Assembly (NCBI GenBank): GCA_038087875.1
Contig: CM075981.1
Location: forward strand, 72,168,001 to 72,232,000
Source: Malacoraja senta
Lineage: Eukaryota
Direction: 5' to 3'
DNA length: 64,000 nt
Shown here: positions 1,173 to 62,755 of the stretch, piece by piece
Numbering within the stretch: the stretch's first letter is position 1
How the letters are laid out: each line of letters opens with the position of its first letter
Translations under genes and position numbers: made by a program
Notes under the pieces: model-generated
Databases searched by the model: none
Seen by the model: only the letters and a program-made list of their open reading frames with translations
Told to the model about the DNA's origin: nothing

Positions 1173-16561
<15,389 letters not shown>

Positions 16562-20300: not shown

Positions 20301-23300
20301 TCAGCTTTCTGCAATACCCGTCGTCTTTCCAGCAAGTTGCTCCTCCTCACTGCAGCCGGTTTGCTCTTCATGTTCACTGCAAACCTCTGCTTCATTTCCT
20401 TCATCTGGTTTACTATCTTTGTCTTCTTCCTCAGAATCTTCATCACTTCCTTCTTCAAACTCTACAGCTCTTAAATGACATTAAGGGAAAGATGTAAGGG
20501 AATGCAGCAAAGTTTTCTCAATTGTATCTGTACACTGTGGATGGCTCGATTGTAACCATGTATTATCTTTCCACTGACTGGTTAACAGGTGTACCTCGGT
20601 ACAGGTGATAAGCTAAACTCAACTCAATTCCTATGGGATTACAAATTAACAGGGGCCTTCACATAGCACTCAGTATTGCCTTGGGAAGTCACTCCCATTT
20701 CTGGAAACAAGTTCCTTTGACTAGACACAAGGTCAAGTACTATCTGCATCCACATGGCCCTCTTGAGATTCATAAGCAGAGAAACAAGTAGAGTTCAAGG
20801 ATAGATGCTCAAGGGATGCCATCAATAACAGTGCAGGTAGGACAGAAGCATTTTGATAGAATTTGATAAAATTATCCCCCAAGCAGAAGCCTCGGATGAA
20901 CCAGGAGATTTATAATCTGCTGAAGGCTAGATCTGTGCCATTTTGCACTGGGGATCCAGAGTCATATAAGTCGTCCAGTAATGACCTCTTAAGGAGGTTG
21001 TGAGCATAAAGAGACAATACTAGACCAAGCGTGAATCACTCACGAACACTCAACGGTTGAGGCTGGGCTTGAAAGTTATTATTTTCTACAAGGTAAAACT
21101 ACGTAGCATAAATGGCATCACTTCTAATTGAGCCAAATAGTTTTTATGTGTTGAAATGGAGAATGATAAAGCACCTACACAAGCCCCCAACAACCTTGCG
21201 ATCTCAGTCTCTGAGGCCAATTTCAGAACATCATTCATTGGGGGTGAATCCACACAAAATGTCTGGCCCAGACGACATATCGTCCCGATTGCTAAAGACC
21301 TATGTGGACCAACTGACTGGAGTATTCGAGGACCATCTTCAACCTCTTGCTTCTGGTGTCTGAGGTTCCCACCTCATTTAAAAGGGCCTCTCACACTGGT
21401 ACCCAATAAATGCAAGTTGACTGCCTTAATGGCCACTGTCCCGTGGCACGTATATGTATCATAATGAAGAGCTTAGAGTTTGGTTATGCCGCAAAACAAC
21501 TTCTGCTTCACAAATGACTTGGATCCACCAATATGCCTAGATCTACAGCAGATGCTATTTCACTGGCTCTCCACTCTGCTTTGGGCCATCTGGATAACAG
21601 GGACATAGACACAATGATTGATTACAGCTCAATGTTCAATATGTTCATCCCCTCCAAACTCATCACCAAGCTCCAGGACTTGGCCTCCATACCTCCCTTT
21701 GCAACTGGATCCTTGACTTCCTCATGACAGACCTCGATCAGTGAGTATCGGTAACATCTCCAGGGTGACCAAGGCTGGGAGCTGAACATCCAGGGATATT
21801 CAATATTCAGGAGGGATAGACAGAAATGAAAAGGAGGTGGGGTAGCGTTGCTGGTTAGAGAGGAGATTAACGCAATGGAAAGGAAGGATATTAGCTTGGA
21901 GGATGTGGAATCGATATGGGTAGAGCTACGAAACACTAAGGGGCAGAAAACGCTAGAGGGTGTTGTGTACAGGCCACCTAACAGTAGTAGTGGAGTTGGG
22001 GATGGCATCAAACAGGAAATTAGAAATGCGTGCAACAAAGGTAAAACAGTTATAATGGGTGACTTCAATCTACATATAGATTGGGTGAATCAAATTGGCA
22101 GGGGTGCTGAGGAAGAGGATTTCTTGGAATGTATGCGGCATAGTTTTCTAAACCAACATGTAGAGGAACCAACGAGAGAGCAGGCTATTCTAGACTGGGT
22201 ATTGAATAATGAGGAAGGGTTAGTTAGCAGTCTTGTTGTGCGTGGCCCCTTGGGCAAGAGTGACCATAATATGGTTGAGTTCTTCATTAGGATGGAGAGT
22301 GACATTGTTAATTCAGAAACAAGGGTTCTGAACTTAAAGAAAGGTAACTTTGAGGGTATGAAACGTGAATTGGCCAAGATTGACTGGAAATTGATTCTTA
22401 AAGGGTTGACGGTGGATATGCAATGGAAGGCATTTAAAGACTGCATGGATGAACTACAAAAAAATTTCATCCCAGTTTGGCAAAAGAATAAATCAGGGAA
22501 GGTAGTGCATCCGTGGATAACAAGGGAAATCAGGGATAGTATCAAAACAAAAGATGAAGCGTACAAATTAGCCAGAAAAAGCAGCCTACCAGAGGACTGG
22601 GAGAAATTCAGAGTCCAGCAGAGGAGGACAAAGGGCTTAATTAGGAAAGGGAAAATAGATTATGAAAGAAAACTGGCAGGGAACATAAAAACTGACTGCA
22701 AAAGTTTTTATAGATTGTGAAGAGAAAGAGATTAGTTAAAACAAATGTAGGTCCCTTGCAGTCAGAAACAGGTGAATTGATCATGGGGAACAAGGACATG
22801 GCAGATCAATTGAACAACTACTTTGGTTCTGTCTTCACTAAGGAAGACATACATAATCTGCCGGAAATAGCAGGGGACCGCGGGTCAAATGAGATAGAGG
22901 AACTGAGTGAAATCCAGGTTAGCCGGGAAGTGGTGTTAGGTAAATTGAATGGATTAAAGGCCGATAAATCCCCAGGGCCAGATAGGCTGCATCCCAGAGT
23001 AATTAAGGAAGTAGCCCCAGAAATAGTGGATGCATTAGTGATAATTTTTCAAAACTCCTTAGATTCTGGAGTAATTCCTGAGGATTGGAGGGTGGCAAAT
23101 TTTAAAAAGGGAGGGAGAGAGAAAACGGGGAATTACAGACCAGTCTAACATCGGTAGTGGGGAAACTGCTAGAGTCAGTTATTAAAGATGGGATAGCAGC
23201 ACATTTGGAAAGTGGTGAAATCATTGGACAAAGTCAGCATGGATTTACGAAAGGTAAATCATGTCTGACGAATCTTATAGAATTTTTCGAGGATGTAACT

Positions 23301-26300
23301 AGTAGAGTGGATAAGGGAGAACCAGTGGATGTGTTATATCTGGACTTTCAGAAGGCTTTCGACAAGGTCCCACATAAGAGATTAGTATACAAACTTAAAG
23401 CACACGGTATTGGGGGTTCAGTGTTGATGTGGATAGAGAACTGGCTGGCAAACAGGAAGCAAAGAGTAGGAGTAAACGGGTCCTTTTCACAATGGCAGGC
23501 AGTGACTAGTGGGGTACCGCAAGGCTCAGTGCTGGGACCCCACCTATTTACAATATATATTAATGATTTGGACGAGGGAATTCAATGCAACATCTCCAAG
23601 TTTGCGGATGACACGAAGCTGGAGGGCATTGTTAGCTGTGAGGAGGATGCTAGGAGGCTGCAAGGTGACTTGGATAGGCTGGGTGAGTGGGCAAATGCAT
23701 GGCAGATGCAGTATAATGTGGATAAATGTGAGGTTATCCACTTTGGTGGCAAAAACAGGAAAGTAGACTATTATCTAAATGGTGGCCGATTAGGAAAAGG
23801 GGAGATGCAACGAGACCTGGGTGTCATGGTACACCAGTCATTGAAAGTAGGCATGCAGGTGCAGCAGGCAGTGAAGAAAGCGAATGGTATGTTAGCATTC
23901 ATAGCAAAAGAATTTGAGTATAGGAGCAGGGAGGTTCTACTGCAGTTGTACAGGGTCTTGGTGAGACCACACCTGGAGTATTGCGTACAGTTTTGGTCTC
24001 CAAATCTGAGGAAAGACATTCTTGCCATAGAGGGAGTACAGAGAAGGTTCACCAGATTGATTCCTGGGATGTCAGGACTTTCATATGAAGAAAGACTGGA
24101 TAGACTCGGCTTGTACTCGCTAGAATTTAGAAGATTGAGGGGGGATCTTATAGAAACTTACAAAATTCTTAAGGGGTGGACAGGCTAGATGCAGGAAGAT
24201 TGTTCCCGATGTTGGGGAAGTCCAGGACAAGGGGTCACAGTTTAAGGATTAAGGGGAAATCCTTTAGGACTGAGATGAGAAAAACATTTTTCACACAGAG
24301 AGTGGTGAATCTCTGGAACTCTCTGCCACAGAAGGTAGTTGAGGCCAGTTCATTGGCTATATTTAAGAGGGAGTTAGATGTGGCCCTTTTGGCTAAAGGG
24401 ATCAGGGGGTATGGAGAGAAGGCAGGTACAGGATACTGAGTTGGATGATCAGCCATGATCATATTGAATGGCGGTGCAGGCTCGAAGGGCCGAATGGCCT
24501 ACTCCTGCACCTATTTTCTATGTTTCTATGTTTCTATCTCCTCAGTGACCAGGAACTTGAATTGACCTGCGAAACTCTAATTCTACCTCAGTTATAGATC
24601 ACTATGGACTACCATGGGGTTGTTTCCTAATTTTGCTTTTGCAATAATCTCTTGTTTTTTGTGCAATCTTTTACTTCTCGCTGTCTTGGATAATTTATAC
24701 ACAATCTCTATTTCTGTGTGTTGTCCAATGCTGCTACCTGTGCATGACAATAAATACATGCGACCTATTTCTGATGTAATTACCCACTCTGCCCCACACA
24801 ATGGAATTTTCTCCTTGGTACCATCCACCTCTCTTCGACCATAAAGCTAGAATTGCTTCTCTCCCATCAGTAATTAAACACCAGGATGCATTGTCTTACA
24901 TTAAAGCTGCTCTAATTGACTTTGTAAACAATAAAGGCACTTAGGTGCAACAGGATACTAAGGTATTACAACCCAGGGAACTATCAAAACACGTTGGTGG
25001 TATTGAAGGGCTAAGAGTTTCCGTAGGTAGACGTGAACATGGTTTAGCTTTCCCAACATCAAACCAGACAAAATATGACAACTTAGAATGTGTGTGCATG
25101 CTTTGCCCTTACCTTCCAAGGTGCGGCTTATTAAGATTACAGAACTCTTTTCCTGAATCGACATCAAATGGATCTGCAAAAGAAAAACTGCTTTAATAAT
25201 GGAACATATCTTCCAGTTACTTTACATTCATTCAACTTTCTCTTGAAGGTGCAAACTCTCACTAGGATTCACTGGTGCCCCAAGGGAAGGAGCACAGTTG
25301 ATGGTCACCATCTAGAAGCTACTGCTGAAACATGACCAAGCTTGTATGTTCTGTCAATACTCAGGACCACAGAGGCTGCACCTACATAAAGCAGAGAAAG
25401 CAAGAATTTTTACCTTCCAGTTCTTCTGGCTCTTCCTTTGCAGAAAGCCACTCCTCCTCAGCTTGATGGACCTCTGCCTCATTCTGGCATGCACTATACT
25501 TCTCCAGTGCTTCTTGGTTCAGTTCCAAGAACGTTTTCCCCCATTTGAATTTCTCTAGTAGAATCTCAGCCAGTTCTGGAAAACCTGCAAGAACCAAACA
25601 TCGTGACAAAGACAGATCAATCTTCCCCCCAAATTTCAGTGTCCTAGACCCATCTTTATATTCCCGTAACGTACCAACTCTTATATTCGCCCACTCCCAT
25701 ACCAGGACCCCTTGTTCAACCTCCAGTTACTGTGTCCCACAACTTTCCATTTACTTTAGAAAACACCACCAGCCATCTCCTCCACACCCAGGCCCCTTCA
25801 TTCCCACCCATTATGCCCTGCTCCAATATTCTACCCTCATTCCTCCATCATCTGTACTTCTTTCTACCTGCTTCCTGAGCACTGCATCCAATCTGTACAC
25901 AAACACAAACTTGGATCAGTCTAGAGGGAGCAGATTGCATCTGTAGAAAGGACATATCTCAAACATGGTCCAGACTGTTCCTCCAACTTACCCACAATGG
26001 CGAACGTGGCTGCAAATGCCTCAACACAGGAAAGCTTGCAGGGTCGCCCATAATTGACTGGATTAGCAGCAATGAGGTGGGGCAGCAGCCGGGGATGTCT
26101 GCCCTTCATCTTTGAGAACGGAGTGTCCGCTAATTTAGCCCAGGAACAATCAATGACAGCCACACCTCGTTGCTCCACGATCTCTCTGGAGAGGTAGAAA
26201 GTGCAGATTGAGGGTCTTAATTTGAATTTGAACTAAACATTGAGGACCAACTCAAATGGAATTCAAAAGTAAAACATTACATGAACTGGAACTCTGAAAA

Positions 26301-27900
26301 GCAGACATTCAGGAAATATCTATGGAGGGGGAAAAACAAAGTTACAGCTTCAGGTGGATATAAGAGCTATAGGCACAAAGGGGAGAGAGATATGGGGGGA
26401 GTGCAGGAATGTGATAAAGAGATAGAGGATCAGCCATGAAGGTACTCAACAGCGCAGTCTCAAAAAGGTCAGGTGACCAACTCCTTCTACGTTTCAATGT
26501 TCACACTTCATACATCATCAATGGAATAATCCCAGCGAGCTGTGATCTGACAAAAGGGAAACAGGACTCGCAAGATTTAATTCCACTACCATTTACAAGT
26601 TGTATAGCAGGCAAAACTCGCAGACTTTTGCAGCAGGGCGAGAGGAGAAATGCCCTATACCATTGCTCCACCCAAATTAACCGCTCAAGACCTGACATGG
26701 TAAAACAATACAATCACAAGAAGCGAATTGTAATTCCATTCCGACTGCAGCATTGCCCAATGACCATGGCACTGATTGACCTTCAATGGATAAGCAGTAG
26801 GCACAAACATTTTGTTAATCGATCTTATATTATTAAACATTTGTTTCATTTACCTGTCAGATGGGGAGACGTATTTTGTTCCTAAAGGAGTGAGAATGAT
26901 TCCATTGAATCTCTCGTTGATACGCATATTGCGGACAAACCCTTTGCGAACAAGTTTCCTGCCTGTGCATCTTTTTGGATCACAATGCCCAAGTTCCCAC
27001 ATGGCCAGCGGGCACGGGAAGTGGAATTTGGGGCATGTTACATCCTCAGATGGCCCATCACCAACAGCTGAAAATCAACCACACCCGCAGGTCAAAGACC
27101 AAACACCAGACACACACAAAATTAACACATGCATTGCCACCATTATCAACAAAGGACAAATTTGAAAATCAAAGCAGAGTAGGGTTAACTATTCAGCCTG
27201 ATTGCCTTCTGGTGCTTTACTAAGAAAGGATGCAGAAAATGAACTACTCTTCACTATAACACGCGTTTATCAGTGAAATCAAAACATAGAAATTGAAGGA
27301 AGATTCACTGCCTAAGGTATTGGTTGGGGCAATTAGGGACTCTACTTAAATGTAGAGTCAGGCAATGCAGAAGCTAGAACACTGCATTATCATGCTCAAT
27401 CACACACAAGATGCAAAGGGCTAAAACTAAGGGCAACAGTATTCCCAACCAAGTTTTGATCCTTACGGTGACACAGCAGTTGTTGCCCTACAGCGTCAGA
27501 GACCCAGGTTCGATCCTGACTATGGGTACTGTCTGCACAGAGTTTGTACATTCCCCCCGTGACCTGTGTGGGTTTTCTCTGGGATCTCCAGTTTTCTCTG
27601 ACCCGTACAGGTTTGTAGGTTAATTGGCTTGGTATAATTGTAAATTAGCCCTAGTGTGTAGGATAGTGTCAGTGTGTGGGGATCGTTGGTCGGTGCGGAC
27701 TCGGTGGCCGAAGGGCCTGTTTCCGTGCTGTATCTCTAAACCAAAACTAAACTAAAGTTATGACATGGTAACGCACCTTGCAGAGCATCATGAAGATCCT
27801 CTCCAAATGTCTCAAAGGATTGGCGCTTCTCTCTGTGATGGGCAACTTTCCATTTTGGACCAGCACGCTCTTTCTTCTGAAACTGTTTCTTCCGCCCCAT
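20301..27900 (-). CDS. TSR3: 18S rRNA aminocarboxypropyltransferase TSR3, complete, 310 aa
   Basis: Coding exons 27900-27777 (MGRKKQ..), 27067-26854 ([19 protein letters not shown]), 26185-25992 ([37 protein letters not shown]), 25584-25414 ([11 protein letters not shown]), 25173-25113 ([11 protein letters not shown]), 20469-20301 (acidic tail, TGA). 933 nt in total and the phases match. Confidence 0.96.
20790..21755 (+). mobile_element. Older decayed Rex/Babar-like LINE RT fragment, interrupted by the CR1
   Basis: Remnants [38 protein letters not shown] and GPDD; many stops. Confidence 0.7.
21762..24535 (+). mobile_element. CR1-clade LINE, 5'-truncated ORF2 (APE endonuclease + RT) with few disablements; antisense within a TSR3 intron
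   Basis: Motifs [37 protein letters not shown] and KFADD. 3' tail (TTTCTATG)n. ATCTCC flanks both ends (21756-21761, 24536-24541). Confidence 0.95.
27466..27756 (+). mobile_element. V-SINE/HE1-like SINE
   Basis: B-box GGTTCGATCC, same core as 55-358, (CTAAA)n tail. Confidence 0.8.
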
Positions 27901-28639
27901 CTGAACAAGAATGCCAGCAATGGAATTGAAGGTGTTGACAGTTCAATCGATGGCAACTGACTCAAGATTTCATGAAATAAAAACACGATAAATAAAAGCA
28001 GAAATTAGGCACATGTAACACCATGGATAAAATTACATCTGTATCACTTTGTGCACTAACACTGTGTCCTATTGTTCTCTTAATATCTAAACATCTATTG
28101 ATCTTACTTGAATGTAGAGTCATACAATACAGATGCAGGCTGTTCACCCTGTGTCCATGTTGACAATGAATTATCAATACTCTTCCCATTTTCCAGCACT
28201 TGGCCCATAACCTTCAATGCAATGGTACTTCAAACACTCTTCTAAATACATCTTAAAAGTTAGAGTAATTACCCCTACCAATACCTCAGGCAGTGAATTT
28301 CAAATTTCAACCATCTCTGGGCGAAAACAAAAATCTTCCTCAAATTTACTTTAAATCCCATACCCTTTACCTTAAGGTTGTTATAAACCTCACTGCTAAG
28401 AGAAAAAGGTCTCGCTGCCTATTCTATCTATTCTGTTCGGGTCGAGTAGAGAACTCCAAAGGCACATCACGACCACTGCAACGACCCTTTGGGTGTCTCA
28501 GGGCCCTGCTGCCCATGTTGCCCTGCAGCAACCACATGCTACACTACTCGCTCCATGGTTGCCTACCTTTACTTTACTAATTTACAACCGCGCGGAAACT
28601 TTTACCACAGCAACGCCAAACTAAAACCCTTGAAACCGA

Positions 28640-29673
28640 TCAAAATGCTGAAGTAACTCAGCGGGTCAGGCAGCATCTCTGGAGAGAAGGAAAGGGTGAT
28701 GTTTCGGGATGAAACCCTTCTTCAGATTGAGAGTCAGGGAAGAGGGAGACTAGAGATATGGAAGGGAAAGGTGTGAAAATGAGATCAAAGCAGACAATGA
28801 TGTAGCATGGTTCATTGTTGGCTGAGGGGGAGGGGACTACGAGGCATACAATCAGTAAAATTAATCCAGAGGACAATGAAACTAGTCGGAGAACTAGGGT
28901 GGGGGAGGGAAGGAGAGTGAGAGGGGATGTAAGGGATACGAAGTTAGAGAAATCAATATTCATTCCGCTGGATTGTAAGCTGCCCATGCTAAATTTGAGG
29001 TGCTGTTCCTCCAATTTGTGTTGGGTAGATAGGGATGAGTTAACCAGGGAGTTGCGTGGGGAATGGTCTCAGTGGAAAGGGGTGGAGATGGGAAGATGTG
29101 GCTAGTGGTGGGATCTTGCTAGAGGTGGCAAAACTATCGGAGGAATATGTGCTGCATGCGACGGCTGATGGGGTGAAAGGTGAGGACATGGGGGACTCTG
29201 TGTCCCTGTTGTGATGGGGGGAGGGGGAGCAAGAGCTTAGCTGCGGGATACCGAGGAGATCCGTCTGAGGGATTCATCTATATTGGGGGAGGGGAACCCT
29301 CGTTCCCCAAAGAACGAGGATGTCCTCGTTTGGAACACCTCATCTTGGGATAGACAGAGGAACTGGGAGTAGGGGATAGAATCTTTGCAGGAGGCAGGGT
29401 GGGAATAAGTGTTGTCTCGATAACTGTGGGAGTCAGTAGATTTATAATAGACGTCCGGCAATAGTCTATCTCCTGTGATGGAGACGGTGAAATCACGAAA
29501 CAGAAGGGAGATGGTTCAAGTGAATTTTTAGTACAGGACGGAAATTGCTAGTGAAGTTGATGAAGTCCGCGAGTTCTGCATGGGAGCAGGAGGTAGCACC
29601 GATGCAGTCGTCAATGTAAAGGAGATAGAGTTGGGGGTAGGGGCAGTGTACGCCTGGAACAACAGGGATTGTT
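28640..29673 (-). mobile_element. Penelope-like element fragment (RT C-terminal part, endonuclease tail, pLTR)
   Basis: Motifs YIDDCIG, DVYYKSTDSHSY, SHPASCKDSIPYSQFL, EEQHLKF..GMNIDFSNF; terminal repeat at 28640-28730. Confidence 0.85.
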
Positions 29674-29779
29674 GGTGTCTCAGGGCCCTGCAGCAACCAC
29701 ACTCCTTTACTTTACTTGGCCGATTTGCAGCCGTGGGGAAAGTTTTACCACAGCAAGGCCAAACTAAAGCTCCCCTTGC

Positions 29780-30080
29780 TCTGGCTGCTTGATCTTGAGC
29801 CTGGACGCCGGGCACCGGCCTCCCTCAGCCTGAAGCCGGCGAGCCCTCCCCACACGCCCGCCCACATTATCGGCGACCAGGCAGCTCCGTTCGCCACTGA
29901 CCGCCCCGATTCACCTGGCAGCTTCTACTTGCTTTTACCTGTCGACCAGCGGTTCGTGGAAATTTGCCCGTGGAAGTGTTCGCTTTTACCCAGGATCGCG
30001 GCACTTCCGGCGCGGTGCCCGGAACCGCGGCCTGGCCGTCGTTATGGCGATGGGCGGCCTGTGTCTCCTCTGGCTGCACT
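29780..30080. promoter_or_regulatory. CpG island / bidirectional promoter shared by TSR3 and GNPTG
   Basis: GC- and CpG-dense. ETS/GABPA-type motif CACTTCCGG at 30002-30010 and CCGGAA near 30019. GNPTG ATG at 30044. Minus-strand donor-like sites (CAG|GTAAAA at 29939/29938; GG|GTAAAA near 29990) could end a non-coding TSR3 exon 1. Confidence 0.8.
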
Positions 30081-33000
30081 GTGAGTCCCCCCCCCCCCCC
30101 CCCTCCTCCCTCCTCCCTCCTACCTCTGGCTGCATTGTGAGTCCCCGAACTCTCCCCCCCCTCCCCCCTACCTCTGGCTGCACTGTGAGTCCCCCAACTC
30201 CCCCCCCCCTCCCTCCCTCCCTCCTCCTCCTCCTACCTCTGGCTGCACTGTGAGTCCCCCCCCCCTCCTACCTCTGGCTGCACTGTGAGTCCCCCAACTC
30301 TCCCCCCCTCCCCCCTCTGGCTGCACTGTGAGTCCCCCAACTCTCCCCCCTACCTCTGGCTGCACTGTGAGACCCCCACTCCCCCCCCTCCTCCCACATC
30401 TGGCTGCACTGTGAGTCCCCCAACTCTCCCCCCCTCCTCCTCCTACCTCTGGCTGCACTGTGAGTCCCCCCCACCCTCCTACCTCTGGCTGCACTGTGAG
30501 TCCCCCAACTCTCCCCCCCCCCCAATCTGGCTGCACTGTCCCCCAACTCTCTCCCCCCCCCCCCTGGCTGCACTCAGTGTGAGTCCCCCCACTCCCCCCT
30601 TCACTTAGCTGCACTGCCTCCCCTCCTCTGGCAGCACTGTGAGTCTCTCCCCCCTCCTCTGGCTGCGCCGCAAGCCCCCCAATCCCCCTCCTCTGGCTAC
30701 ACAGTCCCCCAACTCTCCCCTCTGGCTGCACTGTGAGTCCCCCTCCTCTGGCTGCACTGTGAGTCCCCCTCCTCTGGCTGCACTGTGAATCCCCCTCCTC
30801 TGGCTGCATTGAACCCACCTTCTGGCTGCACTGTGAATCACTATCCCCCTCCTCTGGCTGCACTGTGAGTCTCCGTTCTCATCTCCCCGGCCCAGGCTGT
30901 TTGTACCAACACATCCCTCGATGCGGATATTTGACTAAGGGGTGACGGACATCATAGCTGTTTGTCCGGCCCTGGTCGGTCCAAGGTCAGGTTTGCTTCT
31001 GGTCAATGGCCGGAACGGGTTGCTGACCACTCAATGTACCCGACATCACAGTTGGATGCAGCGACCGGCCCAGCCAAGTCACTCTGACACACTGTGGTCC
31101 TGGGCTCCACAGTTCCTTCCCACACTTTATTGTCCGCAGCTTTTAATACCGTCCGACAACAAGCCGCTTCCATTTCTTCCAGTGCTTCTGGACTTGAACT
31201 CTGATATTAATAGATTTCATTTTCTTTCCCTTCTGCAGTTCTTGGCATCTCGGCTACTAAAATGAAAATTGTAGAAGAGCCCAACACCTACGGGTAAATA
31301 AATTCAAAAAATCGTTCTCCTTGGAGGGTCAGAGTGGTTGGAATCTTCCCAGATCAGGCAGTGATGAATAACTTAATTTCGCTATTTTTATTGGTTTAGT
31401 TGCTTCTCAAGCCACAGATTGTGGGTCAAATCCAACTCCAAAGGCCTTGGGCCAAATCCAGACTGATAGATACTCCAATGTGAATCTGTACTGGTGAACT
31501 GTAAGCCAAAAGCATGTTTTGCACCCCATGACACTGTTTAAAGTGTTCTTCCCAGTGTCCTGTAAATGTAATACAGTACTTAATATTATGATGTTGTTGT
31601 GAAAACATTGCTGTTTGTAGGTCTACAATAATACAAATTGCAGAGCCTAACATAACGACAGGGTAATACACTTTAAAAGTTATTCTTGGTATGTAAAGCA
31701 GTTTGGGATTTTCAGAAAACAGTGTATAAGACTTTGCATAAAATGGTGACAGGTTCTATACCATGGAATGAGGGTGGAAAATGTCCAGTACTGGGATTTA
31801 AAAGAAAGTATAGTTGGGTACTCAAGTTCCAGAAAGACCTCTTTGTCAGATGATAAGGTGGATATAACCTTGGGAACCAGGTTTCACCCAGAGCAAGTAC
31901 CTCAAGACAGAAGGTAGACACAAAATGCTGGAGTAACTCAGTGGGACAGGCAGCATCTCTGGAGAGAAGGAATGGGTGACGTTTCGGGTCGAGACCCTTC
32001 TTCAGACTTCTTCTGAAGAAGGGACTCGACCCGAAACGTCACCCATTCCTTCTCTCCAGAGATGCTGCCTGTCCTGCTGAGTTACAGTACTCCAGCATTT
32101 TATGTCTACCTTCGATTTAAACCAGCATCTGCAGTTCTTTCCTACACACCTCAAGACAGGATCGAGTACAATCTGGAATTGAGGCCTCTGAAATTACCCC
32201 ACAGATATGGAGGAAAAAAATAGAAATTTATGATTTATCAGCACTAATTCCCCACCTCAAACAATCAATAAAATGTGGTTATTTGTATTTCAGGTTGAAT
32301 AATCCTTTCCTGTCCCAAGTAACCCGGCTTCAACCAAAAATACGTCCTGCTGCCATTTCAGGTAATGGATAATGGGATTTTAGCCCTTCATTCTTTCCTG
32401 CCAGCACTTGCTCTCAACCATCACCCATCAGTTATATTTTCCACACCCACTTTCCCCAGACTAAATCCCCCTTGGCACTCTTCTTACTGCAATCTCTCCT
32501 TTTTACCACACCGCCTTCTCCCCATGCTACTCCTCACATGAGATCTATTGATCAAGTGACTCTGCCCACAAATGGGGCTGATAATTACCAATATATAATG
32601 TACATTGTTAAGTGTTTTTATTTCTTTCAGGCCCCCCACATCTGCACAAACTTGCTGGGAAATGCTTCAGTATGATTGAGGCTTCGTGAGTATTAATTTT
32701 ATTGACTGCAGTAACGATAATCTCCCAGATAGATGGATGGTGCATTTTTCTAGCATTTTGTTCAAAGATACACAGTGCTCATGAAATCTACAATTTCAAA
32801 GGGAAATTGTGTACATTCAGCCTTTCATTTTGGTTATGAACTGATAGTTGTGGAAACAACTTTGTAAATCTTTTATTTTGCATCCACTCCTGTACCTCCA
32901 TCCTTACACAATGGATCAAATAAAACTGTCTGTGGCTGGCAGTTCTGAAGGGAAATGCTGACATACTGCTGAAGTACAAACCCAGACTTGCACAGCCCCA

Positions 33001-62182: not shown

Positions 62183-62755
62183 TGGGGAGGTGAGGAGTGG
62201 GGGAGCAGGGGATAGAGGGAGAGAAGGGTAGGGAGGGAGAGGGAGGGGAAAGTGGGGGAGGTGAGGAGGGAGTGTGGGGGAGGAGGGGGGGATGGAGGGA
62301 GAGGAGGGGGCAGTGGGGGAGGTAGGGAGTGGGGGATAGAGGGAGGGCAGTGGGGAAGATGATGAGGGAGAGTGGGGGTGGGATAGGGAGGAGTGGGGGG
62401 CAGGAGGATAGAGGGAGAGGAGGGGGGTAGGGAGGGGAGAGAGGTTATGGACGGAGGGAGGGAGTGACTGAGTGTAGTGGAAAGGAGAGGGAGGGAGAGG
62501 TGAGGGAGGGAGTGGGGGAGGGGTGGAGGAGAGGGGAAAGAAGAGGGAGGGTGAAGAGGAGGGGGAGGGAGTGCTGGGGGATGAGGGGGAATGGAAGAGG
62601 ATAGGGGTAGGAAGAGGGATGGCGAGGTAATGGAGGAGGGGGGTAGAGGGAGGAGGGGAGGGAGGGGGTGAGGGGAGGAAGCAGAGGAGTTGATGGAGGG
62701 TGGGGAGAGGGAGGATAATGGAGGAGGGGAATAGGGGACTGAAGAGGAAGAGTGA
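62183..62755. repeat. G/A-rich low-complexity tract (GGA/GGGA)
   Basis: Almost pure purine + strand with many G-runs. Confidence 0.9.

What the first reader, a model, noticed from the sequence alone, without database searches (positions are those of the whole stretch)
30066..30870. Minisatellite made from the GNPTG exon-1 splice donor: an array of ~22 tandem 5' splice sites
Seen: exon 1 ends ..CTCTGGCTGCACT|GTGAGT (30080/30081), and phase 1 fits exon 2 (..[14 protein letters not shown]). That exact junction recurs ~22 times over 800 bp, about 13 with intact GTGAGT, separated by poly-C. In this assembly donors 2-4 (30137, 30185, 30250) are out of phase and all later ones lie beyond an in-frame TGA (30251). 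So only the most distal (first) donor gives protein, although identical donors lie closer to the acceptor. Inference: the array may act as a U1 snRNP sink or decoy, or as an unproductive-splicing rheostat tuned by copy number and C-run slippage. Its position beside a bidirectional promoter could also affect transcription directionality through U1 telescripting.
Basis: partly seen in the sequence, partly recalled or inferred. Interest (0 to 1): 0.75.

Follow-up and report, generated by a model that had tools for sequence, protein, structure and literature searches.

The report
Splice-donor minisatellite in skate GNPTG intron
The first intron of a skate's GNPTG gene begins with an 800-base tandem repeat that grew from a copy of the exon-1 splice donor; it is real, but it belongs to a kind of repeat already known from human genes such as F7, and comparison with other skates gives no sign that the extra donors are kept for a purpose.

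Summary
Window 30067-30870 holds 22 tandem units: the last 13-14 bases of GNPTG exon 1, then GTGAGT, then a C-rich spacer. Fourteen GTGAGT are intact, and only the first (30080|30081) is in phase with exon 2 ahead of the in-frame TGA at 30251.

RNA contigs and annotated proteins of related skates all join this first donor to exon 2. I found no RNA from the window's own species.

The array is skate-specific. It has about 5, 9, 23 and 22 units in Leucoraja, Amblyraja, Rhinoraja and the window. It is absent from sawfish and zebra shark, whose intron 1 is about 330 bases with one donor. The first and last units are orthologous across skates, and the interior turns over. Nine of the window's 13 extra donors lie in an expansion that Leucoraja lacks. 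The old shared interior units (window 13, 16 and 20) have lost GTGAGT in each skate where a counterpart was seen, and the donor hexamer decays faster than the core beside it.

This is therefore a junction-derived minisatellite of the known F7 IVS7 / IFI6 / CBS / LMNB2 type, where the most upstream donor wins. The U1-sink or rheostat idea is unsupported, though one Leucoraja contig does use a downstream array donor.

Earlier notes of this scan report two more such arrays in this genome (ZBTB16, FUT11).

The parts
30067..30870 (+). Minisatellite of 22 units (core CTCTGGCTGCACT + GTGAGT + C-rich spacer). Unit 1 is the end of exon 1 plus the working donor. Units 2-12 (30107-30603) are an expansion that Leucoraja lacks. 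Units 13, 16, 20 and 22 have orthologues in other skates.
30044..30080 (+). GNPTG exon 1 coding part ([12 protein letters not shown] + 1 base, phase 1); functional donor ACT|GTGAGT at 30080|30081.
   Evidence: RNA contigs of related skates end this exon exactly here. Annotated skate proteins start [20 protein letters not shown].
30081..31238 (+). GNPTG intron 1 (1158 bases). The first 790 bases are the array; the rest is unique sequence 83-86% identical to other skates.
31239..31293 (+). GNPTG exon 2 (55 bases, ..[19 protein letters not shown]).
29939..30043 (.). Shared promoter-proximal stretch: the GNPTG 5' UTR on the + strand (an RNA contig starts at 29972) and a non-coding TSR3 leader exon on the - strand. 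CpG-rich (observed/expected 1.05 over 29801-30066). A CACTTCCGG (ETS-like) motif and a GTTATGGCG (YY1-like) motif are conserved in the four skates; the YY1-like one differs by one base in sawfish, and the ETS-like one is not conserved there.
   Evidence: The motif names rest on my own knowledge.
27957..29938 (-). Intron in the TSR3 5' UTR, GT..AG on the minus strand (AG|GTAAAAGC ... TCAG|TTGCC), filled with transposon fragments.
27777..27956 (-). TSR3 exon carrying the start codon (ATG at 27900 on the minus strand).

Best explanation
This is a skate-lineage intronic minisatellite that arose by tandem duplication of the GNPTG exon-1/intron-1 junction. It has since grown, shrunk and turned over by slippage or unequal exchange. 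Its first unit is the real end of exon 1 and the real donor. The other units are intronic pseudo-donors that are normally removed with the intron. The spliceosome commits to the first, cap-proximal donor as the transcript emerges, as shown experimentally for the same kind of repeat in human F7 intron 7. Occasional splicing from a downstream unit gives an mRNA without the signal-peptide exon in frame. This may be why pseudo-donor hexamers are lost faster than the rest of the unit. The array itself is most likely a passenger without a selected function. Shown here: the anatomy, the origin from the junction, use of donor 1 in related skates, turnover between species, and the preferential decay of pseudo-donors. 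Inferred: the first-come or cap-proximal choice in skates, and neutrality.
For: Anatomy and chance test. Gene identity: PRKCSH domains in downstream exons and 74-89% identity to elasmobranch GNPTG. Donor 1 is joined to exon 2 in six RNA contigs (X3 record 1 and X4 record 9, inferred from piece ends and depth; L001, L008, L009 and L010, read directly). The N-termini of further RNA-contig proteins and of the annotated proteins of Leucoraja, Amblyraja and Rhinoraja agree. Origin: sawfish and zebra shark have the same junction (..CTCTGGTTACACG|GTGAGTCC and ..CTCTGGTTGCCGG|GTGAGTGT) once, in an intron of about 330 bases with no repeat. Turnover: about 5, 9, 23 and 22 units with 2, 6, 6 and 14 GTGAGT in Leucoraja, Amblyraja, Rhinoraja and the window. 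Both array ends are orthologous. Window 30107-30603 has no counterpart in Leucoraja. Decay: outside the first unit, the donor hexamer carries 108 mismatches in 300 sites against 41 in 300 for the neighbouring 6 bases of the core, in the same direction in all four species. A downstream array donor is used once: the first 41 bases of contig L006 match Leucoraja 8128-8168 exactly, the genome continues GTCAGT, and the contig continues with exon 2. Precedent: PMC1557585.
Against: No RNA from the window's own species was found, so the use of its 13 extra donors is untested. Assembled contigs drop rare isoforms, and nonsense-mediated decay would hide unproductive ones. The array has persisted at this spot since before the four skate genera split, which a strictly neutral repeat need not do. 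The decay statistic treats units as independent although they are copies of one another. Small deletions also shift the register: GTGAGT to GT looks like a slip between its two GT. So mutational bias could mimic selection.
Confidence: 0.75

Rival explanations
1. The array is a selected U1 snRNP sink or decoy, or an unproductive-splicing rheostat. Extra donors would bind U1 or divert a share of transcripts into frameshifted, degraded mRNAs, and copy number and C-run length would set GNPTG output.
For: There are 14 intact GTGAGT within 800 bases of the cap. All downstream donors are out of frame or lie behind a stop in all four skates. One Leucoraja contig uses a downstream array donor and codes only the isoform without the signal peptide. 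The array has been retained in four skate genera.
Against: The number of intact extra donors varies from 1 to 13 among skates with the same gene structure. Old orthologous interior units have lost the donor where a counterpart was seen, and the donor hexamer decays faster than the adjacent core. Most assembled transcripts use donor 1. In human F7, identical pseudo-sites are silent and do not compete (PMC1557585). The intron-retaining contigs L003-L005 explain the short isoform without any array donor.
Confidence: 0.1
2. The array works at the DNA or transcription level. It would be a C-rich/G-rich promoter-proximal element of the shared TSR3/GNPTG promoter, acting through G-quadruplex or i-motif formation, through Sp/KLF/MAZ-type sites, or through promoter-proximal 5' splice sites that boost initiation.
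For: The array starts about 100 bases downstream of the GNPTG start region and abuts the TSR3 leader exon. It is 51% C and 15% G, with 33 runs of four or more C and 6 canonical four-run motifs. The C-rich character is kept in all four skates.
Against: Sawfish and zebra shark run the same gene pair without it. Length differs four-fold among skates. No binding or expression data exist, and the motif assignments rest on my own knowledge only.
Confidence: 0.1
3. The array is an assembly artefact, or exon 1 has been placed wrongly.
For: Long homopolymer C runs are error-prone, and short-read depth inside the array is low (one internal contig at depth 4 against about 33 in the flanks).
Against: Short-read contigs match both ends and an internal piece with at most one difference. 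Three other skate assemblies have the array at the same position. RNA contigs place the exon-1 end exactly at 30080.
Confidence: 0.02

Closest known systems
Human F7 intron 7 minisatellite (37-bp VNTR, 5-9 copies; Borensztajn et al. 2006, PMC1557585)
   Same: The first monomer spans the exon-intron boundary, so the authentic donor is followed by identical pseudo-donors. Only the most upstream one is used. Copy number is variable.
   Different: F7's repeat follows an internal exon and has a regular 37-base unit and few copies. Here the repeat follows the first exon, close to the cap and to a shared promoter, and has 22 units of irregular length (21-65 bases) with C-run spacers. Many units have already lost the donor. 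Polymorphism within the species was not tested.
Human IFI6 (6-16) intron 2, CBS intron 13, LMNB2 and PDGF intron 4 minisatellites (as listed in PMC1557585)
   Same: They are junction-derived arrays of 10-25 reiterated donors. In IFI6 and CBS the two most upstream pseudo-sites are used besides the authentic donor; in LMNB2 and PDGF only the authentic donor is used. The Leucoraja contig that uses a downstream donor is loosely like the IFI6 and CBS pattern.
   Different: Here every alternative donor is non-productive. The donor seen in use in Leucoraja is a degenerate distal unit (GTCAGT), not the second or third copy.
Donor-derived minisatellites noted earlier in this same genome (ZBTB16 last intron, FUT11 intron 1; scan notes s1-197975 and s1-191407)
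   Same: Same genome and the same construction: an exon-intron junction amplified into tens of copies. Follow-up agents filed them under the same known class.
   Different: They are in other genes and positions, and I did not check them. Several of the FUT11 and ZBTB16 copies are reported as in frame, whereas here none is.

Membership tests
Exon-intron-junction minisatellite (F7 IVS7 type) | Tandem array of a 10-100-base unit, several to tens of copies | tested here: met
   22 units over 804 bases. TRF scores reach 413. There are 17 motif matches against 0.18 expected.
Exon-intron-junction minisatellite (F7 IVS7 type) | The first monomer spans the exon-intron boundary, so the authentic donor sequence is reiterated in the intron | tested here: met
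   Unit 1 is the last 13-14 bases of exon 1 plus GTGAGT, and 13 further GTGAGT follow. The outgroups have the junction once.
Exon-intron-junction minisatellite (F7 IVS7 type) | The most upstream donor is the one used in mature mRNA | tested here: met
   Met in related skates only: six RNA contigs, plus further contig-derived and annotated proteins, join donor 1 to exon 2. No RNA of the window's own species was available.
Exon-intron-junction minisatellite (F7 IVS7 type) | Copy number variable (VNTR) | tested here: inconclusive
   Copy number varies between species: about 5, 9, 23 and 22 units.
Exon-intron-junction minisatellite (F7 IVS7 type) | Pseudo-sites are competent and are activated when the upstream site is destroyed | not testable with these tools
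   This needs minigene mutagenesis. The only hint is one contig that uses a downstream array donor in Leucoraja.
U1 snRNP decoy or sponge element | The U1-complementary sites are maintained by selection | tested here: not met
   The donor hexamer is more decayed than the adjacent core (108/300 against 41/300 sites). Old orthologous interior units lack it, and counts of extra donors range from 1 to 13 among species.
U1 snRNP decoy or sponge element | U1 occupancy, and an effect on expression or polyadenylation | not testable with these tools
   This needs U1 CLIP or antisense blocking and reporter assays.
Bidirectional (head-to-head) promoter pair TSR3/GNPTG | Divergent genes whose transcription starts lie within about 1 kb of each other | tested here: met
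   TSR3 is on the minus strand and GNPTG on the plus strand. RNA contigs merge a TSR3 leader exon (29939 onward, spliced to 27956 by a minus-strand GT-AG intron) with GNPTG exon 1, so the two transcripts overlap by at least an assembler word. The exact start sites are not known.

The most novel reading that the evidence does not exclude
Skate genomes may be unusually prone to seeding minisatellites at 5' splice sites: three are now noted in this one genome (GNPTG, ZBTB16, FUT11). That would point to a lineage-specific link between splice-donor sequence or co-transcriptional events and tandem duplication. Alternatively, the promoter-proximal donor array could tune GNPTG/TSR3 output through U1 recruitment, with copy number acting as a heritable dial. 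Neither reading is excluded, because there are no genome-wide counts, no within-species length data, and no RNA from this species.
Probability: 0.1. Interest if true: 0.6.

Novelty: new member of a known kind. Interest (0 to 1): 0.3.

Why it matters
Taken alone it matters little. It is one more junction-derived minisatellite, a class described in human genes decades ago and dissected in F7.

Its value is comparative. The array can be followed through four skate genera against two outgroups without it. That shows how such arrays are born from a single donor, how they turn over while keeping their end units, and that reiterated donors are lost faster than the rest of the unit. This is the pattern expected if extra donors are mildly harmful rather than useful.

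It also offers a natural series of about 5, 9 and 22-23 units after a first exon. That series could be used to test the first-come or cap-proximal rule of 5' splice-site choice outside mammals. It corrects the local gene map too: TSR3 has a non-coding leader exon overlapping GNPTG exon 1.

Tried and rejected
I therefore inferred the exon 1 to exon 2 junction from contig piece ends and depth arithmetic (contig depth x 55/197 equals the depth of the bin holding exon 2). I then confirmed it on fetched RNA contigs.

2. I searched for proteins that read from exon 1 into the array, or from donors 2-4 into exon 2, using the 69-residue read-through ORF as query. Nothing scored. The length filter and low complexity make this blank weak.

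3. I looked for RNA from the window's own species. All 15 members of the protein cluster differ from the window's exons at the same few residues, so none comes from this species. The RNA runs that were laid are from related skates, with 3-4% differences in the TSR3 exon.

4. I asked whether RNA structure hides the pseudo-donors. Folding 29972-30300 gives a z-score of 0.30, no better than shuffles.

5. I asked whether the array belongs to a dispersed repeat family. The 17-mer occurs nowhere else in the window.

6. I tried further outgroups. Narcine is not on record and no DNA is served for Heterodontus.

7. My first decay test used anchors across the whole intron and was diluted by chance anchors. 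I replaced it with an array-bounded test.

8. The donor-strength figures (6.8 bits against 12.6 for the consensus) use a weight matrix typed from my own memory. They are only indicative.

Full report
**Observation.**
- GNPTG exon 1 starts at the ATG at 30044 and ends at 30080 (..CTCTGGCTGCACT), followed by GTGAGT.
- A fuzzy scan finds 22 copies of the core between 30067 and 30870, spaced 21-65 bases apart by C-rich tracts.
- Thirteen copies carry GTGAGT in register and one more carries it shifted, giving 14 GTGAGT in the intron.
- The 17-mer core-plus-donor matches 17 times at up to 3 mismatches, all within the array, against 0.18 expected.
- TRF sees the array at periods of 26 to 168, and it is the largest tandem array in the window.
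- The phases are as stated. The ORF from the ATG ends at the TGA at 30251. Donors at 30137 and 30185 are phase 0 and the donor at 30250 is phase 2. Later phase-1 donors lie behind the stop.
- Exon 2 is 31239-31293 and intron 1 is 30081-31238.

**Gene context.**
- Downstream exons carry PRKCSH-type domains. They match elasmobranch N-acetylglucosamine-1-phosphotransferase gamma subunits at 74-89%.
- Upstream on the minus strand lies TSR3 (Ribo_biogen_C and Fer4_RLI domains). Its start codon is at 27900, 2.1 kb from the GNPTG ATG.
- RNA contigs nevertheless join 27956 directly to 29939. On the minus strand this gap begins GT (AG|GTAAAAGC) and ends AG after a pyrimidine tract.
- TSR3 therefore has a non-coding leader exon that overlaps the GNPTG 5' UTR in antisense. 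The 2 kb of transposon debris between them is a TSR3 5'-UTR intron.
- The two genes share a CpG-rich promoter region (observed/expected 1.05). An ETS-like motif and a YY1-like motif are conserved in the four skates; the YY1-like one differs by one base in sawfish, and the ETS-like one is not conserved there (the motif names are my own knowledge).
- The array begins about 100 bases downstream of the GNPTG start region.

**RNA evidence.**
- The one reads call laid assembled contigs, not raw reads.
- Two RNA runs of related skates each have a contig whose exon-1 piece ends exactly at 30080 and continues. The depth over the bin holding exon 2 equals contig depth x 55/197, as expected if exon 2 follows.
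- Fetched RNA contigs confirm the junction base by base. In L001, L008, L009 and L010 the single core copy is followed directly by exon 2.
- All annotated GNPTG proteins of Leucoraja erinacea, Amblyraja radiata and Rhinoraja longicauda, and further RNA-contig proteins, begin [22 protein letters not shown].
- Three contigs (L003-L005) retain the 3' part of intron 1 and code only the short isoform that starts in exon 2.
- One contig is different. The first 41 bases of L006 match Leucoraja 8128-8168 exactly. This lies inside the distal part of the array, where the genome continues GTCAGT, and the contig continues with exon 2. A downstream, degenerate array donor is therefore used at least sometimes in Leucoraja, giving a non-productive 5' end.
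- None of these RNAs comes from the window's own species, and contigs hide rare isoforms.

**Comparative evidence.**
- Gene-body identity with the window is 92-93% for Leucoraja and Amblyraja, 89% for Rhinoraja and 71% for sawfish.

| Species | Units (approx.) | GTGAGT in intron 1 | Intron 1 |
|---|---|---|---|
| Window | 22 | 14 | 1158 bases |
| Rhinoraja longicauda | 23 | 6 | 1038 bases |
| Amblyraja radiata | 9 | 6 | 671 bases |
| Leucoraja erinacea | 5 | 2 | 624 bases |
| Pristis pectinata (sawfish) | none | 1 | about 330 bases |
| Stegostoma tigrinum (zebra shark) | none | 1 | about 330 bases |

  (Sources.)
- The two outgroups have the same junction once. The junction is therefore ancestral and the array derives from it.
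- Both ends of the array align across the four skates, so the array predates their split. The interior does not align.
- A gapped alignment places Leucoraja's units on window units 1, 13, 16, 20 and 22. It leaves window 30107-30603 (units 2-12) without a counterpart.
- Window units 17-21 match a 26-base subarray in Amblyraja at 91%.
- Rhinoraja expanded a different variant of the core (TCTGGCAGCACT).
- Nine of the window's 13 extra GTGAGT lie in the expansion that Leucoraja lacks. The shared interior units 13, 16 and 20 lack the donor in the window and in Leucoraja and Amblyraja. Unit-level orthology with Rhinoraja's interior was not resolved.

**Decay test.** I anchored units on TCTGGC within the array and left out the first unit. 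I then compared the next 6 bases (core) with the following 6 (donor).

| Species | Donor mismatches | Core mismatches |
|---|---|---|
| Window | 22/120 | 6/120 |
| Leucoraja | 19/24 | 11/24 |
| Amblyraja | 20/48 | 10/48 |
| Rhinoraja | 47/108 | 14/108 |
| Pooled | 108/300 | 41/300 |

(Source.)
- The units are not independent, and small deletions shift the register, so the p-values overstate the case.
- The direction is still consistent in all four species. It is the opposite of what selection to keep U1 sites would give.

**Mechanism.**
- The best reading is a junction-derived minisatellite that behaves like its human counterparts.
- PMC1557585 describes minisatellites whose first monomer spans an exon-intron boundary in F7, IFI6 (6-16), CBS, LMNB2 and PDGF.
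- Here the chosen site is also the cap-proximal one. From established knowledge, the cap-binding complex favours U1 recruitment there. This step is inferred, not shown.
- I found no RNA structure that would mask the other sites (z = 0.30).

- A U1 sink, a decoy or a copy-number rheostat is not excluded. It is not supported by the large differences in donor number between skates with identical gene structure, by the faster decay of donors, or by the concentration of the window's intact donors in the expansion that Leucoraja lacks.
- The telescripting argument loses force because the opposite direction is a real gene (TSR3) transcribed away from the array.
- A DNA-level role for the C-rich tract near the shared promoter (33 runs of four or more C, 6 canonical four-run motifs) is possible but untested. 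The outgroups do without it.

**Other arrays in this genome.** Earlier notes of this scan report two further donor-derived minisatellites in the same genome (ZBTB16 and FUT11), filed under the same known class. I did not check them. They raise the question of whether skates are prone to such arrays.

**Limits.**
- There is no RNA from this species and no within-species length data.
- The homopolymer lengths that set the phases of donors 2-4 come from a single assembly.
- Short-read contigs cover only the ends of the array and one internal piece.

Noticed in passing
window 27957-29938 (minus strand): The 2 kb between the TSR3 start-codon exon and GNPTG exon 1 is a TSR3 5'-UTR intron filled with repeat fragments. 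These include a minus-strand ORF with a reverse-transcriptase-like YIDDCIG motif (29493-29702) that has no Pfam hit. Read depth there is thousands-fold above unique sequence.
   Followed up: partly
L007 8440-8530 against window 31095-31125: A second small tandem repeat in the same intron: a 16-base unit (GGGCTCCACTGTTCCT) is present about 5 times in Leucoraja but only once or twice in the window and in Amblyraja. RNA contigs that retain the intron break there.
   Followed up: no
window 31343-31539: One RNA run of a related skate (X4) shows depth of about 50 over this stretch of intron 2, just after exon 2, while the other RNA run shows none. It could be a retained intron, another transcript end, or a repeat.
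   Followed up: no
window 31737-32327: Extremely high contig depth in all four runs (up to tens of millions).
   Followed up: no
window 30080|30081 against L002 6037|6038 and L013 4043|4044: The skate donor has T at position -1 (CACT|GTGAGT), whereas sawfish and zebra shark have G (ACG|GTGAGT and CGG|GTGAGT). The amplified donor is therefore a weakened form of the ancestral one, and the junction codon changes from Val to Phe.
   Followed up: partly
window 62194-62627: A purine-rich (GGA/GAG) tract with a 56-base tandem periodicity and long open frames rich in G, E and R. It looks like a low-complexity satellite.
   Followed up: no
window 23157-24188: A 343-residue plus-strand ORF with clear reverse-transcriptase motifs (a LINE-type element fragment) lies inside the TSR3 region.
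   Followed up: no
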